Assembly: GCA_002269645.1 (NCBI GenBank)
Contig: NIVC01000059.1
Location: forward strand, 1,430,002 to 1,494,001
Direction: 5' to 3'
Source of the DNA: Macrostomum lignano
Taxonomy: Eukaryota
DNA length: 64,000 bases
Of the stretch, positions 14,796-53,360 are shown in pieces. The notes below the pieces were generated by a model. That model saw nothing but the letters and a program-made list of their open reading frames with translations. It was not told the origin of the DNA and did not search any database. The stretch's first letter is position 1. Each line of letters begins with the position of its first letter. Both the position numbers and the translations under genes were made by a program.

Positions 14796-16551
14796 TCATT
14801 TTGGATTGCGACCCAGTCTCCCATTCACACTCAGGTGGGCATGAGCACGGTCCCATGTGCGCAGCGCAGCATTGTGCCTATTCAGCAGGGATTCCACCGA
14901 GTTCAGCCTCATTTCCACCAGGTCAATGGATGTATCGAACGCGACTGAAATGACGACAACATTACTCAGTATCAAAACTAACCAGTGCTAAACAGTCCAA
15001 AGCTCAACTCACCGTCAGAATCCACATACGACTCGTGTGTCTCCTGCGCTCTATTCCAGAAGGTGTTCTTGAATCGCTGCAGGACGAACTGCACAATCTG
15101 GAAGTCGCGCGCTCCACCGACCTCGGAGTTCTTGGACATCTCGTAGCTTTCATTCAGTACGCTGACGAAGAAGTTGACGATGACGAACGTAAGAAAGGAG
15201 ACGTAGATCGAGAAGGCTATCTTCGGTAAAAGTCCGTGGTGAGTGACTATCTGTATGTCGAACTTGCCCAGCATCGCAGTGAACAAGGTGGACATTGCGC
15301 CAGCTGGTGAGTTGAACTGCTGCTGCACTGAGCCAAGCAGCAGATTCATGAGCAGGCTGAAGGCAACGAAGATCACACAGAAGACGATGCTGAACGAGCG
15401 CATCTGGCTTAGAGAGAGGCGAAGCGTAGCAAGCAGGTGACTGAGGTTGGTGCTGAACCTGACGAGACCCAGCAGAGACAGCTGAAGCATGAAGGTGCCG
15501 GCGCCAAGGCAGTAGTAAAAGTACTGGTTCAGCAGCAGCAGAGCCCGTAGCTGAGGTCTGCCGCCGTTCACAGCAGCTTCGAGAGCGGCCCCAGTGTTGG
15601 CAGTCCGGACTCCATAGATGATTGCGGTCGCAGTCATGCTCAGCGCAACGCCAACGTCCAACCAGTTCTCGAAGCTGTTCCAGAAATCTCGAAACTTCCG
15701 CAACCGCAAAAGAAGCAGGACCAGCCGAATGAGGACGATGATGCCAGCTAGAATCTCTGAGACCAGAGCGAAGACTCCCATGGCACCGACGTACCGATAG
15801 AGACGAGTGCTCAGCAGCTGCTGGCTCACCAGAGCTCCACCAAACGGTTGCAGCTCAACAGCCAGGGTGACAGAAGTGAACAGGTTAATGTCGGAGTACA
15901 GCAGGTCCAAGTCGATGGCCACAAAGCGAGTGTGTCGATCCAGCCAGCTCTGGCTCTTCAGCTCATCGATCAGAGTTCGGCTTTGCTCAAGGCTGTCGGG
16001 CAGCAGGATCGAGAAGCCACCTCCGCGGTACTCAGCCAGCCGTCCCGAGTATCCGGCACCGTCGACACGGTTCATGAAGGCTTGGGCAAGAAGCTCGCCA
16101 TCCGTGAGGTTGCACGGCGTCAGCTCTGTCCAGCCAGGAGCAAAGCAGCGCGTTTCGTCTTCGTCCCTGTCGCTGACGAGCCCGACGCTGACCGGCTTGC
16201 GACGCCGCCGCAGCTGCCGCACGGAGACGCGGCTTAGCCGATAGCCGCAGCCGTCAGAGATGAGCTTGGATCCGGACTTCGGGAACACGGATGGCAGAAA
16301 GCTGTCGTTGAGTGCGCTGTACATTTGATCGACAGTGTTCGACACAGACTCAATATCAGCATATTTCAAGTGGTTCAGAACGCTCTCGTGCAGCTGGAAA
16401 GTCATCGGGTCCAGATTGGTGTAGCAGATGCAGTACTGCAGCAACAGCAGCAGAATGGCAAGACAGGCGTTCACGGAGCTGCTGATGGCCTCTTTTCTCA
16501 GGGGATCCTTCTTGGCCTCGGACTGCAGCTCGTGCAGGTAGGCGACGCCCT
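14796..16551 (-). CDS. PKD1-like: Copy A: TOP domain, six-TM polycystin channel domain and C-terminal coiled coil (last two exons)
   Basis: YSGRLAEYRGGGF, LKSQSWLDRHTRFVAID..LYSDINLFTSVTLAVE, pore AMLGKFD, S6 FVIVNFFVSVLNESYE. Donor GTGAGT at 15007-15012; the last exon encodes VAFDTSIDLVEMRLNSVESLLNRHN...PK*. Confidence 0.93.
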
Positions 16552-52500: not shown

Positions 52501-53360
52501 AAAGCGTCAGCCGAGTACACGGGCGAAGTGGTCATCAGCGATTTCTTGGGCGAGTGGCCAGCGTAGAAACGGGTCACCGGGCTCGAGTTCGCCGCCCTGC
52601 TGATGTTGCTGAACACCAGAAAGCCAGTGACCGTGAAGTTCAGAGGAAAGTAGATCCGGACCCATTTATCGCCGTTCAGGAGGGCACCCTGAGCTGTGGG
52701 TCCGCCTGGCTCGGCTCGGAAGCTGAGCGACATCAGGCCCTGATTAGTGTCGCTGCTGCCGAGGACGACCCAGGAGACGGGGAAGTAGCGGCCGAGGCCC
52801 ATCGGAGACCGGCTGAGCTGGTCGAGCTGGGCGGCACCTGCCGATGCAGGGAAAGGAAAGATTATCTAAAATTCAATTTTTCTAAACGTGTTCAAAATTA
52901 CAATAATTTGAGTTCTAAACGACCGACAGAGAGAGAAATATGAATAGATCAGCGGATAACGTGACAGCCGTTCAAATGTACGCAGGCTCGATTCCGTGCA
53001 CGGCCACAATAAGTTGAGGCTTGTGCAGTTCTCTCCCATGATGGCCAACCCCATAAGGCACAGATAATTTTTTAAGTGTTTAAATTGAAGTTCTGCTTGT
53101 TTCTTTTAAACTAGACTTTGTTCAAAATCGGAGGTAAAATGGTGTAGACAATGAAAAGTCATCGCAAGTATGCCACAGATCTGTGTACATTTGAGTGCTC
53201 TCTTTGCTGAGCTGCGGATCGACGTCTTCTCGAGTTGCGGCAATGCTAAAAGCGTCCCAGCAAACTGGATAATCAACTCACCGATCGACTGCGCGTCGCC
53301 TGCGGGCCAGACTCCGACAACGCTGCAACAGGCGAAGATTCTAAGAAACAGTTTCAGCAT
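14796..53360 (-). CDS. PKD1-like: Polycystin-1-like receptor-channel, copy A: 64 exons, about 5360 aa, with a giant multi-lectin ectodomain and one +1 frameshift in this sequence
   Basis: Hand-built exons with matching phases (5'->3'): 53360-53282, 52837-52491, 50544-50388, 48908-48691, 48026-47897, 47822-47654, 46047-45848, 45767-45528, 45230-45108, 45031-44900, 44408-44328, 43852-43619, 43534-43301, 42998-42793, 42087-41760, 38686-38604, 38489-38346, 37076-36935, 36849-36625, 36365-36226, 36121-36028, 35577-35213, 34781-34631, 34532-34336, 31936-31638, 31439-31228, 30789-30496, 30373-30257, 30183-30052, 29980-29909, 29819-29592, 29517-29284, 29068-28902, 28811-28362, 28265-28113, 28039-27892, 27773-27549, 27455-27301, 27261-27117, 27023-26838, 26739-26540, 25923-25779, 25689-25493, 25298-25169, 24968-24764, 24688-24450, 24335-24081, 23999-23865, 23293-23088, 22992-22407, 22313-21218, 21126-20960, 20882-20449, 20370-20146, 19936-19805, 19732-19639, 19561-18467, 18400-18233, 18157-18003, 17931-17430, 17365-17072, 16982-16877, 16551-15013, 14944-14796. 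The total is 16089 nt after removing one base at 19289-19293. Individual boundaries may be off; no transcript evidence. Confidence 0.75.
16877..18400 (-). CDS. PKD1-like: Copy A: PLAT/LH2 domain and TM2-TM5 exons
   Basis: YLMDVYTDKYKGCSTTG; RSGDIDHFTMTTAKHLGDI..W.LRKIVITD; DDHLWMSVF..FSRLQRFGVCF.LLFMTMIANAMFY; LPYWCQYIGW..FYAMQWGQEKSQQWLLSF..LLVQPLK. All match the PKD1-family pattern. Confidence 0.9.
18467..22313 (-). CDS. PKD1-like: Copy A: one PKD domain, REJ module, GAIN/GPS-like region and TM1
   Basis: PKD VVDFGD..FSHVY...GGFSASLLAFNHVS; REJ PASGGNCTINP..G.AMIT.YQISC.GW; GPS-like CSMWD..W..C..SNLFGSFG..VLPNLIDF; TM1 VVATVVTLWIIFIPIAVWLR. Confidence 0.88.
22407..27023 (-). CDS. Copy A ectodomain unit 3: discoidin, discoidin, CTLD, unknown module, discoidin, discoidin
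   Basis: VGLEDGRI.ASQLS; FLEIQLD..ITGIVWQG; RILP..LRVELLGYP; CTLD ECP..LCYW..C..GRLA..WSTVPC..FICE; EWLQVNL..VRAVAMSG; LPNPVIGRHFRIHP..KFELFGC. Confidence 0.8.
27117..35577 (-). CDS. Copy A ectodomain unit 2: 2 discoidin, CTLD, unknown module, split discoidin hosting kringle + F-lectin-like + FAMeT-like, then F-lectin-like
   Basis: CTLD CPPGFT.HGDIC..C..GSLL / FHIGM..WFWFDG; kringle C..G..NVTAEGRVC..NYC / CW....EPC..QNC; FTP PVDGN..CFQH..WFVDLG..LSLCEFEVYG; FAMeT-like LDTDDFANISITW..IRV..SCWD..VNKIGYS. Confidence 0.78.
31555..31625. repeat. Intronic 18-bp tandem repeat, about 4 copies
   Basis: accaagtgcagtc(c/t)taa(t/c) units. Confidence 0.8.
33744..34086 (+). mobile_element. tRNA-derived SINE with a CORE/Meta-like central domain and (ATT)n tail (family 2)
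   Basis: A box ggcctagtggtt; B box GGTTCGATTCC (33792-33802); central GTGTCCTTGAGAAAGACACTTAACC...CTTCAGTT..CCCAGCTGTAAAATGGG (33823-33882); ATT repeats at 34014-34086. Confidence 0.8.
35696..35986. repeat. (TAAC)n microsatellite, about 72 copies, intronic
   Basis: Direct reading. Confidence 0.98.
36028..52837 (-). CDS. Copy A ectodomain unit 1 (same module order as unit 2, spread over long TE-containing introns)
   Basis: Discoidins KWVRIYFP..VTGFLV / LQLDLIGYP; CTLD CPDGW..SCWYP..C..GRLL / FHTGL..WVWGDG..C..FIC; kringle TMTASGRACVPW; FTP-like LLVDLKS / NFSIKVGN..C..GRYV; FAMeT-like; FTP VNDG..SCW..PWIAIDF..IAELEVYG. Confidence 0.75.
38798..39491 (+). mobile_element. Crypton-like remnant 1, bounded by CCATAGAC...GTCTATGG
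   Basis: ORF 39045-39338 ends in EIDRLEKDCAVQSTEKQTELY, resembling the region just N-terminal to the Crypton/KCTD1/ZMYM tyrosine-recombinase-derived domain. 8-bp inverted termini at 38798 and 39484. Confidence 0.45.
39538..40142 (+). mobile_element. Crypton-like remnant 2, bounded by CCATAGAC...GTCTATGG
   Basis: ORF 39450-39998 contains AVNTVKRNKWAVGVFTRWL, matching the NT..T.WAV..F..W motif of Crypton-type recombinases, and stops before the catalytic core. Inverted octamers at 39538 and 40135. Confidence 0.55.
40201..41562 (-). mobile_element. Non-autonomous DNA transposon with about 160-bp TIRs and an HTH remnant
   Basis: 40201-40365 is the reverse complement of about 41400-41562 (TAGCATTT...AAATGCTA), flanked by TACTA on both sides (or a TA TSD). 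ORF 41110-41349 IVAAIERGDSAEHISRWLDVKRKTVYSI is HTH-like. Confidence 0.75.
40369..41018 (-). mobile_element. Nested Tc1/mariner deletion derivative
   Basis: TA|CACTCAGCAACATTGAAAAGTTTCCACCCT...AGGGTGGAAACTTTCCAATATTGCTGAGTG|TA. ORF 40517-40783 RARAIGMLDAGLSIRAVAHQIGRSHTAIRKL is a Tc1-type paired-like HTH; no DDE domain. Confidence 0.85.
43950..44250 (-). mobile_element. tRNA-derived SINE (family 1), degenerate copy
   Basis: ctgtgccttggggg-ttggc, caagccccaaa and gcaggcacac blocks are shared with 11870-12178; degenerate B box gttcgtttcc. Confidence 0.6.
46218..47224. repeat. 1-kb compound (GACT)n/(GAGT)n satellite inside the intron that splits CTLD1
   Basis: Units of (GACT)3-6-AGAGTGAGTGGGT; a block of about 260 bp recurs at about 46243 and 46500. 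Confidence 0.97.
47420..47592 (-). mobile_element. Degenerate tRNA-derived SINE-like fragment
   Basis: Minus strand ggggcgtagcggtagcgc...cccaGGTTCGATTCC: a perfect B box and a head similar to the 12178 element. Confidence 0.5.
49728..50224. repeat. GC-rich 20-bp minisatellite, about 25 copies, intronic
   Basis: Unit AGAGACAGGGGCGCCCACCA with few variants (gcac, atca, ctaa). Confidence 0.97.
53282..53360 (-). CDS. Signal-peptide first coding exon of copy A
   Basis: MLKLFLRIFACCSVVGVWPAGDAQSI followed by a phase-1 GTGAGT donor that joins exon 52837-52491 in frame. Confidence 0.7.

What the first reader, a model, noticed from the sequence alone, without database searches (positions are those of the whole stretch)
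14796..53360. Giant (about 5360 aa) polycystin-1-like receptor with a multi-lectin, kringle and FAMeT ectodomain
Seen: 64 exons join in frame from a signal peptide to a polycystin channel and coiled coil. The ectodomain has about 10 discoidin-like, 3 CTLD, 2 kringle, 4 F-lectin-like and 2 FAMeT-like modules, and only one PKD domain. Known: PKD1-family ectodomains usually use LRR, WSC, CTLD, PKD or SUEL plus REJ. Inferred: an unusual adhesion, glycan or mechano-sensing receptor-channel subunit. I cannot confirm whether this architecture has been described. The ORF track hides it because most exons are short.
Basis: partly seen in the sequence, partly recalled or inferred. Interest (0 to 1): 0.88.

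Follow-up and report, generated by a model that had tools for sequence, protein, structure and literature searches.

The report
Lectin-armed polycystin-1-like gene, flatworm
A flatworm (Macrostomum) gene appears to join about 3,200 residues of sugar-binding-type modules to a polycystin-1-like sensory channel. It would be an unusual variant of a known receptor family, but no transcript supports it and the assembled copy has a one-base frameshift.

Summary
The multi-exon gene on the minus strand is real. My best model has 61 GT-AG exons and 5,289 aa, running from ATG 53360 (signal peptide) to stop 14796. Its 3' third is an unambiguous PKD1L-type module: REJ, PLAT, 11 hydrophobic segments, polycystin/TOP domain and PKD channel.

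The ectodomain is lectin-like and holds an internally duplicated cassette of about 1,000 aa (29% identity, shared intron positions).
- Supported: 3 C-type lectin domains, 4-7 discoidin domains, and weakly 4 F-lectin-like domains.
- Not supported by any tool: the kringle and FAMeT calls.

1. The exons do not all join in frame. Exon 19561-18467 has one extra T (19289-19293) compared with a 98%-identical intact tandem paralog at 55700-64000.
2. Homology to that paralog and to a distant Macrostomum lignano relative starts abruptly at 22342, in the middle of what is one exon in them. The usual PKD repeats were therefore replaced by the lectin exons.
3. No transcript or protein record covers the ectodomain-REJ junction.

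dN/dS of 0.23 against the paralog argues for long-term constraint. Verdict: probably a chimeric lectin-polycystin receptor, a new variant of a known kind, with integrity and single-gene status unproven.

The parts
14796..53360 (-). Whole predicted gene: 61 exons, 5,289 aa after removing one T. Exons (high-low): 53360-53282 52837-52491 50544-50388 48899-48691 48026-47897 47822-47654 46077-45848 45767-45573 45230-45108 45010-44900 44249-44079 43852-43619 43534-43301 42962-42793 42087-41740 38489-38346 37076-36935 36849-36625 36365-36325 36121-36028 35577-35213 34781-34631 34532-34336 31936-31638 31439-31228 30789-30496 30373-30257 30183-30052 29819-29588 29480-29284 29068-28902 28811-28362 28265-28113 28039-27892 27830-27310 27204-27117 27023-26838 26739-26540 25923-25779 25689-25493 25298-25169 24968-24764 24688-24450 24335-24126 23999-23865 23293-23088 22992-22407 22313-21218 21126-20960 20882-20449 20370-20146 19936-19805 19732-19639 19561-18467 18400-18233 18157-18003 17931-17430 17365-17072 16982-16877 16551-15013 14944-14796
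   Evidence: My own dynamic-programming gene model plus curation against internal repeats and the paralog. Exon 44249-44079 and several short exons are uncertain.
53282..53360 (-). Exon 1: start codon and signal-peptide-like N-terminus
   Evidence: ATG at 53360. There is no in-frame ATG upstream within the open frame. Hydrophobic stretch at residues 1-19.
36028..48899 (-). Ectodomain super-module A: discoidin-like, CTLD1, unknown module, kringle-like, F-lectin-like, FAMeT-like, discoidin-like, F-lectin-like
   Evidence: Aligns collinearly with super-module B at 29% identity over about 1,000 columns, with shared intron positions. Lectin_C 3e-7 spans the exon 6/7 junction.
27117..34532 (-). Ectodomain super-module B: same order of modules, with CTLD2
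   Evidence: The exon 31/32 junction is matched by the spliced M. lignano fragment P0075.
22407..27023 (-). Proximal ectodomain: discoidin-like D11 and D12, CTLD3, unknown linker, discoidin-like D13 and D14
   Evidence: F5_F8_type_C 1.8e-4 (D11) and 6.4e-7 (D13, above Pfam threshold). Lectin_C 1e-3. D14 is found by a local HMM at 5.6e-6.
22314..22406 (-). Junction intron (93 nt) between the last lectin exon and the PKD/REJ exon. The homology breakpoint is at 22342.
   Evidence: Similarity to the paralog (DNA), and to P0002 and P0003 (protein), begins at 22341/22342. All three continue upstream into PKD repeats in the same exon. The acceptor tctctgtag|AC lies in sequence that codes S-V-D in the paralog.
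21218..22313 (-). Exon with the single PKD domain and the start of REJ
   Evidence: PKD 2e-3, REJ 2e-26.
19289..19293 (-). T-run with one extra T: a +1 frameshift inside exon 19561-18467 (REJ/GAIN region)
   Evidence: Alignment with the paralog exon 60264-59171. Removing one T opens 2,001 codons in the paralog's frame.
18003..18400 (-). PLAT domain exons, following TM1
   Evidence: PLAT 1.2e-3. TM1 at aa 4289-4307.
15013..17931 (-). TM2-TM11 with polycystin/TOP domain and PKD channel
   Evidence: Polycystin_dom 2e-23, PKD_channel 2e-15. PDB matches: PKD2L1 1.4e-36, PKD2 4e-34, PKD1L3 5e-18. 95% identical to the M. lignano UniRef fragment P0001.
14796..14944 (-). Last exon: short heptad-repeat tail and the stop codon
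   Evidence: Translation. Hydrophobic residues fall at 3-4-3-4 spacing in IDLVEMRLNSVESLLNRHNAAL (read directly; not tested with a coiled-coil tool).
55700..64000 (-). Upstream tandem paralog (3' part only): PKD repeats, REJ, 11 TM and channel, intact ORF
   Evidence: 77-98% DNA identity to 14813-22342, in a mosaic pattern.

Best explanation
The window comes from Macrostomum lignano or a very close relative. It holds two tandem PKD1L-type genes on the minus strand.

The upstream gene (64000->55700, incomplete in the window) has the family's usual layout: PKD repeats and REJ in one large exon, then PLAT, 11 TM segments and a PKD2-like channel.

The gene in question keeps the same REJ-to-channel half (22313->14796). 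It lost everything upstream of a breakpoint inside that ancestral exon. That half is predicted to be spliced, through an acceptor recruited from former coding sequence, to 47 upstream exons. These encode a signal peptide and about 3,240 aa of lectin-type modules: three C-type lectin domains and about 14 galactose-binding-like beta-sandwiches (discoidin-like and F-lectin-like). They are interspersed with orphan modules and were largely built by tandem duplication of a cassette of about 1,000 aa.

Inferred mechanism. The product is a type-I, 11-TM receptor-channel subunit whose C-terminal six helices would co-assemble with PKD2-like subunits. By analogy with planarian pkd1L genes, this would occur in ciliated sensory neurons. 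The multivalent lectin ectodomain would bind glycans or matrix and pass binding or force to the channel.

What is shown and what is inferred.
- Shown: the domains, the breakpoint, the internal duplication, and purifying selection on the 3' half.
- Inferred: the ectodomain-REJ splice, expression, the partner subunit and the ligand.

The single extra T at 19289-19293 is most simply a homopolymer error or allele in a redundant long-read assembly. Otherwise it is a very recent inactivating mutation.
For: Organism: the last large exon is 95% identical to a M. lignano UniRef protein.

C-terminal module: Pfam REJ, PLAT, Polycystin_dom and PKD_channel. PDB PKD2L1/PKD2/PKD1L3 at 1e-36 to 5e-18. The nearest non-flatworm relatives are vertebrate PKD1L2/L3, about 1e-42. 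Eleven TM-like segments and an N-terminal signal.

The ectodomain is coding.
- Lectin_C and F5_F8_type_C alignments run collinearly across predicted splice junctions.
- Modules A and B share 29% identity and intron positions without DNA similarity.
- M. lignano fragments P0075-77 are 45-54% identical paralogs of both the A-type and B-type modules, and P0075 spans my exon 31/32 junction.

One gene rather than two.
- The REJ exon has a stop 26 codons upstream of the acceptor and no ATG or signal peptide of its own.
- dN/dS against the paralog is 0.23 overall, and 0.14 where dS is about 1.0. This points to long-standing constraint, which requires upstream exons that supply a signal peptide.
- The splice restores the ancestral GAC (Asp) codon and falls at a PKD-domain boundary.
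- The 93-nt junction intron has no AATAAA or ATTAAA.

The frameshift as a possible error: everything else in 6 kb is open. The M. lignano assembly is PacBio-based, Pilon-polished and highly redundant at >=95% identity (PMC5730564).
Against: - No transcript, EST-derived protein or database protein covers the ectodomain or the exon 47/48 junction. The only near-identical public protein is a 534-aa C-terminal fragment.
- As assembled, the frame is broken at 19289-19293.
- The 3' half is 5'-truncated relative to the family's conserved exon. Together with a frameshift, that is what a partial-duplicate pseudogene looks like.
- Low dN/dS could partly reflect gene conversion from functional paralogs (dS ranges from 0.03 to 1.0 in a mosaic) rather than selection on this copy.
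- Several ectodomain exons are weakly supported. One acceptor in module B is out of register with its module-A homologue.
- M. lignano makes polycistronic, trans-spliced transcripts, so an internal acceptor need not be a cis-splice site.
Confidence: 0.55

Rival explanations
1. Two units. First, a giant secreted multi-lectin protein gene (53360 to about 22390) whose last exon reads through the 'donor' into a stop five codons later (...GFPVGESSC*). Second, a dead partial duplicate of the neighbouring PKD1L gene (22342->14796), truncated at its 5' end and carrying a frameshift.
For: - The breakpoint lies in the middle of the ancestral exon.
- There is a +1 frameshift.
- A stop codon lies at 22392-22390, right after exon 47.
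- No RNA or protein evidence exists for the junction.
- The mosaic dS fits repeated gene conversion, which can keep a pseudogene looking conserved.
Against: - Apart from one base, 2,001 codons and 13 splice-site pairs of the 3' half are intact. This includes a stretch with dS of about 1.0 and dN/dS of 0.14, which is hard to keep without selection.
- No canonical poly(A) signal lies in the 93 nt after exon 47.
- The exon 47 donor GTGAGT and the pyrimidine-rich acceptor are good sites, and the phase fits.
- A 3,240-aa secreted protein ending exactly at a splice-donor consensus would be a coincidence.
Confidence: 0.28
2. Assembly artefact. The contig wrongly joins a lectin-rich gene to a copy of the PKD1L gene, or collapses or garbles duplicated copies. 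The chimeric architecture would then not exist in the animal.
For: The published M. lignano assemblies are highly redundant and hard to assemble (PMC5730564). At least three near-identical copies of the C-terminal exon exist: target, paralog and P0001. There is an indel in a homopolymer.
Against: - The breakpoint is not at a repeat. The 3' half differs from the neighbouring paralog by 3-23% in a mosaic pattern, so it is a distinct locus and not a duplicated read pile.
- The junction falls neatly at a usable splice acceptor, in phase.
- The flanking sequence is continuous, with no N runs or composition break.
Confidence: 0.1

Closest known systems
Vertebrate PKD1L2 / PKD1L3 (polycystin-1-like 2 and 3)
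   Same: REJ, PLAT, 11 TM, TOP domain and a C-terminal PKD2-like six-helix channel. Lectin-type modules in the ectodomain (C-type lectin, and the SUEL/Gal_Lectin domain in PKD1L2). These are the best non-flatworm hits, about 1e-42. PDB match to the PKD1L3 C-terminal domain, 5e-18.
   Different: The vertebrate proteins are about 2,400 aa, with one C-type lectin domain and one SUEL domain. This gene has about 3,240 aa of ectodomain, with 3 C-type lectin domains and about 14 discoidin/F-lectin-like beta-sandwiches, no SUEL, and one weak PKD repeat. Pfam GPS is not detected and the HL[ST] triad is absent.
Macrostomum lignano PKD domain-containing protein A0A1I8GUP3 (P0002, 2,595 aa), and the tandem paralog in this window
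   Same: Same REJ-to-channel half: 58% aa identity to P0002 and 92% to the window paralog, with the same exon structure.
   Different: They carry PKD repeats upstream of REJ in the same exon. The target's homology stops at 22342 and lectin exons take their place.
Sea urchin REJ proteins (SpREJ1-10)
   Same: PKD1-family members with variable, lectin-bearing ectodomains (C-type lectin, SUEL, EGF, WSC, PKD repeats). They show that the family tolerates ectodomain shuffling (PMC1934368).
   Different: No discoidin, F-lectin, kringle or FAMeT-type modules are reported there. Their ectodomains are much smaller. SpREJ1-3 act in sperm-egg jelly recognition.
Planarian pkd1L-1 / pkd1L-2
   Same: Flatworm PKD1L genes expressed in ciliated sensory neurons with pkd2 partners. 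RNAi reduces chemosensory behaviours (pkd1L-1) or mechanosensory behaviours (pkd1L-2) (PMC11448475). This is the basis for the functional inference.
   Different: No lectin-rich giant ectodomain is described for them. Orthology to this gene was not tested.
F-type lectins (e.g. striped bass FBP32, PDB 3CQO) and discoidin (F5/8 type C) domain proteins
   Same: Four modules share the C-x-H-[ST]...W-x-V-D-L and GRYV...L-x-L-x-E-V-E-V-x-G type motifs. FBP32 is the only PDB hit of their profile (E=0.07). One module passes the Pfam F5_F8_type_C threshold.
   Different: Support is marginal, and fucose-binding residues were not assessed. These families are normally found in secreted or adhesion proteins, not in polycystins.

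Membership tests
PKD1 (polycystin-1-like) family | REJ domain | tested here: met
   Pfam REJ 2.1e-26 and 1.7e-7 on consecutive pieces, 3.9e-30 on the crude translation.
PKD1 (polycystin-1-like) family | GPS/GAIN autoproteolysis motif (HL[ST]) before TM1 | tested here: not met
   No Pfam GPS hit at E<=0.1. There is no HL[ST] in the 300 aa before TM1. The position reads VSNLFGSF in both the target and the intact paralog. A GAIN-like fold is not excluded.
PKD1 (polycystin-1-like) family | PLAT domain after TM1 | tested here: inconclusive
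   Pfam PLAT E=1.2e-3 at 20 bits, below the 23-bit threshold. Position and coverage are correct (profile 1-100 of 117).
PKD1 (polycystin-1-like) family | Eleven transmembrane segments with an N-terminal signal peptide | tested here: met
   A hydropathy scan finds the signal (1-19), TM1 at 4289, five more segments at 4494-4770, and the channel helices at 4990-5193. This is a crude method, with no dedicated TM predictor.
PKD1 (polycystin-1-like) family | Polycystin/TOP domain plus PKD cation-channel helices | tested here: met
   Polycystin_dom 2.1e-23, PKD_channel 2.1e-15. PDB PKD2L1 1.4e-36, PKD2 4e-34, PKD1L3 5e-18. All top Foldseek hits are polycystins, although the model was poor (pLDDT 44).
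PKD1 (polycystin-1-like) family | PKD repeats in the ectodomain | tested here: inconclusive
   One stretch with a WDFGD-like motif (VVDFGDS), at 18.5 bits against a 23.5-bit threshold. The repeats present in the paralog and in P0002 are missing.
PKD1 (polycystin-1-like) family | Intact open reading frame | tested here: not met
   +1 frameshift at 19289-19293 relative to the paralog. The uncorrected frame stops at aa 4091.
C-type lectin domain | Match to the Lectin_C profile over its full length | tested here: met
   CTLD1: 3.1e-7, 31.5 bits (threshold 22.6), profile 2-106 of 107. CTLD3: 1e-3, 20.3 bits. CTLD2: no Pfam hit, but homologous to CTLD1 by self-BLAST (8.9e-6 and 3.2e-7).
Discoidin / F5/8 type C domain | Match to the F5_F8_type_C profile | tested here: met
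   D13: 6.4e-7, 30 bits (threshold 28.2). D11, D4 and D9 are sub-threshold (1.8e-4 to 0.018). A local HMM built from these four finds D14 (5.6e-6) and, marginally, D6 and D1. D2, D7 and D12 are not detected.
F-type lectin (FTP) domain | Profile or sequence match to known F-lectins | tested here: inconclusive
   No Pfam hit. A profile of the 4 modules has a single PDB hit, the F-type lectin FBP32 (3CQO), E=0.07, matching both of its domains.
Kringle domain | About 80 aa with six conserved Cys and the NYCRNPD...PWC core; match to the Kringle profile | tested here: not met
   No Pfam hit at E<=10. Only the first half-motif (C..G..Y.G....T..G..C) is present. The C2-C3 spacing is 13-15 aa instead of about 22, and later Cys residues are missing. 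Angiostatin is the top PDB hit but at E=0.35.
FAMeT / Methyltransf_FA domain | Match to the Methyltransf_FA profile or to family members | tested here: not met
   No Pfam hit at E<=10 for either copy or for 3 M. lignano paralogs. A profile search of 1.84 billion representatives returns only 2 M. lignano fragments. PDB gives nothing. The AF2 model is unusable, pLDDT 37. The resemblance is by eye only.

The most novel reading that the evidence does not exclude
Macrostomum has evolved a lineage-specific family of giant polycystin-1-like receptors. In these the PKD-repeat stalk was swapped, by partial duplication and exon shuffling, for a multivalent lectin array. That array includes orphan modules with no detectable relatives outside the genus. 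The result would be a glycan-sensing sensory channel subunit with an ectodomain type not described for any polycystin. The frameshift would be an assembly error.
Probability: 0.35. Interest if true: 0.6.

Novelty: new variant of a known kind. Interest (0 to 1): 0.45.

Why it matters
What polycystin-1-family ectodomains sense is still open. The known ones use LRR, WSC, PKD, C-type lectin or SUEL modules.

A family member whose whole stalk was replaced by discoidin, F-lectin and C-type lectin modules would show how freely the REJ-11TM chassis accepts new sensor arrays. It would also point to glycan recognition as an input.

Macrostomum lignano is transgenic-tractable, so expression and knock-down tests are feasible.

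The locus is also a clear example of three processes:
- domain-boundary exon shuffling at a datable breakpoint;
- mosaic gene conversion between tandem paralogs;
- internal duplication of a 1,000-aa cassette.

If instead the 3' half is a dead partial duplicate, the finding reduces to a large secreted lectin gene next to a pseudogene. That would be of modest interest.

Tried and rejected
- The first passes chained through neighbouring genes. They also took the 20-bp minisatellite at 49727-50224 as a 546-nt exon and invented 3-nt and 20-nt exons. These errors were corrected with paralog and internal homology.
- The look-up of encoding contigs for P0001 returned nothing on record.
- The search for homologous proteins with a 3,259-aa pseudo-ectodomain gave no hit at 1e-5. 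This rules out near-identical database proteins. It was too blunt to find the 50%-identical fragments that turned up later.
- The search of protein representatives and structure prediction refuse spliced sequences, so only single exons could be used.
- AF2 of the FAMeT-like exon (pLDDT 37) and of the channel exon with a 24-row alignment (pLDDT 44) were too poor for fold assignment.
- phmmer of both kringle/F-lectin/FAMeT stretches against the PDB found nothing meaningful.
- I considered and rejected a genuine 40-nt intron at 19324-19285. The paralog reads straight through at 98% identity, and all other introns are at least 61 nt.
- I considered and rejected a stand-alone REJ-channel gene starting at 22313. 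It would have no ATG or signal peptide.
- Literature searches found no polycystin with discoidin or FA58C modules. This covers only open-access full text and is not an InterPro architecture query.

Full report
ORGANISM AND SETTING

The window is eukaryotic and spliced. [quoted passage not shown] That protein turns out to be a third copy: it is 95% identical to the target and 93% to a second copy in the window. This fits the known redundancy of the M. lignano assembly (PMC5730564).

Neighbours of the target are:
- a ZO-like PDZ/GuK/ZU5 gene on the plus strand (6196-9913);
- a separate 2xCTLD ORF on the minus strand (4445-5440).

THE OBSERVATION

ATG 53360 opens MLKLFLRIFACCSVVGVWPAGDAQS, and TGA closes the frame at 14796. 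No spliced aligner or transcript was available. I therefore wrote a dynamic-programming exon chainer using a 3-periodic Markov coding score, splice-site weight matrices retrained on the locus, phase bookkeeping and a check for stops in split codons.

Forced between those two points, it always finds an in-frame GT-AG chain: 52-73 exons and 4,834-5,261 aa, depending on the intron penalty.

I curated the result with two independent guides:
- protein-level similarity between internal repeats;
- exon-by-exon alignment to the tandem paralog.

The curated model has 61 exons and 5,289 aa. All 60 introns are GT-AG, and 33 of them are 61-130 nt.

The opposite strand gives a chain score of 5 against 1,199. 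This control is partly circular, because the coding model was trained on these exons.

Pfam alignments for Lectin_C, F5_F8_type_C, REJ and PLAT run collinearly across predicted junctions, which supports those splices.

WHAT THE PROTEIN CONTAINS

The C-terminal 2,050 aa are a textbook PKD1L-type module.

| Feature | Evidence |
|---|---|
| One weak PKD domain | Pfam 2e-3 |
| REJ | Pfam 2e-26 |
| TM1 | aa 4289-4307 |
| PLAT | Pfam 1e-3 |
| Ten further hydrophobic segments | hydropathy scan |
| Polycystin/TOP domain | Pfam 2e-23 |
| PKD channel | Pfam 2e-15 |
| PDB matches | PKD2L1 1e-36, PKD2 4e-34, PKD1L3 5e-18 |
| Nearest relatives outside flatworms | vertebrate PKD1L2/L3, about 1e-42 |

The GPS cleavage triad is absent in both window copies. 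The tail has three heptads of coiled-coil-like spacing (read directly from the sequence).

The ectodomain (aa 27-3238) is lectin-like.
- Pfam passes its own threshold for one C-type lectin domain and one discoidin domain.
- It gives correctly placed sub-threshold hits for another C-type lectin domain and three more discoidin domains.
- A local HMM built from the four Pfam-supported discoidin-like domains picks up D14, and marginally D6 and D1.

By motif I count 14 beta-sandwich modules, four of them with F-lectin-type motifs.

A profile of those four F-lectin-type modules has exactly one PDB hit, the F-type lectin FBP32, at E=0.07. That is suggestive but not significant.

The kringle and FAMeT calls did not survive testing.
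- Neither gives a Pfam hit at E<=10.
- The kringle-like stretch keeps only the first half-motif, and its best PDB hit is angiostatin at E=0.35.
- The FAMeT-like profile finds only two M. lignano fragments in 1.84 billion representatives and nothing in the PDB.
- AF2 on the single exon failed, with pLDDT 37.

These are best called orphan modules.

INTERNAL DUPLICATION

The ectodomain contains two copies of a cassette of about 1,000 aa: module A at 48899-36028 and module B at 34532-27117. They align collinearly at 29% identity. Exon lengths and phases are largely conserved, for example 234/234 and 170/167 nt, and 130+169 nt in A equals 299 nt in B. They share no DNA similarity.

M. lignano UniRef fragments resemble both cassette types at 45-54% identity. 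P0075 resembles the B type, and P0076/77 the A type. P0075 spans my exon 31/32 junction. A paralogous ectodomain family therefore exists and is represented in the species' annotated proteome.

First, a tandem paralog occupies 64000-55700. It is 77-98% identical in DNA to 22342-14813 and has the same exon structure. Its ORF is intact and runs off the window through PKD repeats.

Second, the frame is broken. The target's exon 19561-18467 is 1,095 nt against 1,094 nt in the paralog. The extra T lies in the run 19289-19293.
- Removing it opens 2,001 codons.
- As assembled, the frame ends at aa 4091.
- My programme could bridge the break only with a 40-nt pseudo-intron.

Third, there is a structural breakpoint. 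Similarity to the paralog, to the distant M. lignano protein P0002 (58% identity) and to P0003 all begins at 22341/22342. That is 30 nt upstream of the predicted acceptor. All three continue upstream into PKD repeats within one exon. So the target's REJ exon is 5'-truncated and the lectin exons replace the PKD repeats.

The acceptor (tctctgtag|AC) lies in sequence that codes S-V-D in the paralog. The splice phase rebuilds the same Asp codon, at a PKD-domain boundary.

IS IT ONE LIVING GENE?

For:
- The REJ exon has no ATG or signal peptide of its own.
- Its dN/dS against the paralog is 0.23 overall, and 0.14 in the stretch where dS is about 1.0. All splice sites and all other codons are intact. 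This is difficult to reconcile with a long-dead fragment. It implies expression together with upstream exons that provide a signal peptide.
- The mosaic dS (0.03-1.0) indicates gene conversion acting on an old duplication.

Against:
- No RNA or protein record covers the junction or the ectodomain.
- A stop follows five codons after the exon 47 donor, so a secreted lectin ending there is conceivable.
- A 5' truncation plus a frameshift is the classic pseudogene signature.
- Gene conversion can mimic constraint.
- M. lignano uses trans-splicing and polycistronic units.

My estimates are 0.55 for the chimeric single gene, 0.28 for 'secreted lectin plus dead partial duplicate', and 0.10 for a mis-assembly.

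FUNCTION (INFERRED)

By analogy with planarian pkd1L genes, which act with pkd2 partners in ciliated chemo- and mechanosensory neurons (PMC11448475), the product would be a receptor-channel subunit. Its multivalent lectin array would bind glycans or matrix.

COMPARISON AND NOVELTY

Known PKD1-family ectodomains use LRR, WSC, PKD, C-type lectin, SUEL, EGF or LDL-A modules (PMC1934368; PMC8846589). I found no report of discoidin or F-lectin arrays in a polycystin. I could not run an InterPro architecture query.

I file it as a new variant of a known kind. Interest is moderate: the architecture and its origin are neat, but expression, integrity and the most exotic domain labels are unproven.

Noticed in passing
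window 55700-64000 (-): 3' part of an intact tandem PKD1L-like paralog (PKD repeats, REJ, PLAT, 11 TM, channel). Its identity to the target is a mosaic of 77-98%, with dS from 0.03 to 1.0. This points to gene conversion between old duplicates.
   Followed up: yes
window 6196-9913 (+): Consecutive ORFs with two PDZ domains (1e-26), a guanylate-kinase domain (6e-9) and ZU5 (2e-6): a ZO/TJP-like scaffold gene on the opposite strand.
   Followed up: partly
window 4445-5440 (-): 331-aa ATG-initiated ORF with two C-type lectin domains (1.4e-16). It is a separate lectin gene just downstream of the target.
   Followed up: partly
window 40520-41361 (-): Short ORFs with Tc1/mariner-type (Sleeping Beauty-like) HTH domains inside the 3,250-nt intron. 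This is a degraded DNA transposon.
   Followed up: partly
window 46218-47224 and 49727-50224: Two intronic tandem arrays: a (CTGA)n-like array of about 1 kb, and a 20-bp minisatellite of 25 copies that is open in all reading frames and mimics a long exon.
   Followed up: yes
window 29480-29588: In super-module B the acceptor homologous to module A's (29517) is out of frame. Only 29480 fits, which drops 12 residues that align with module A. This is either intron sliding or a second small indel in the assembly.
   Followed up: partly
P0075-P0077 (UniRef A0A1I8GUS6, A0A1I8F262, A0A1I8GCT3): These M. lignano fragments are paralogous to the orphan 'FAMeT-like' module. They carry automatic names ('CUB domain-containing', 'Pilus assembly protein PilW', 'TonB-dependent receptor') that Pfam does not support.
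   Followed up: partly
window about 18650-18700 (aa about 4250-4260) and the paralog equivalent: The GPS autoproteolysis triad HL[ST] is replaced by NLF (VSNLFGSF) in both the target and the intact paralog. These PKD1L proteins are therefore probably not cleaved at the GPS.
   Followed up: partly
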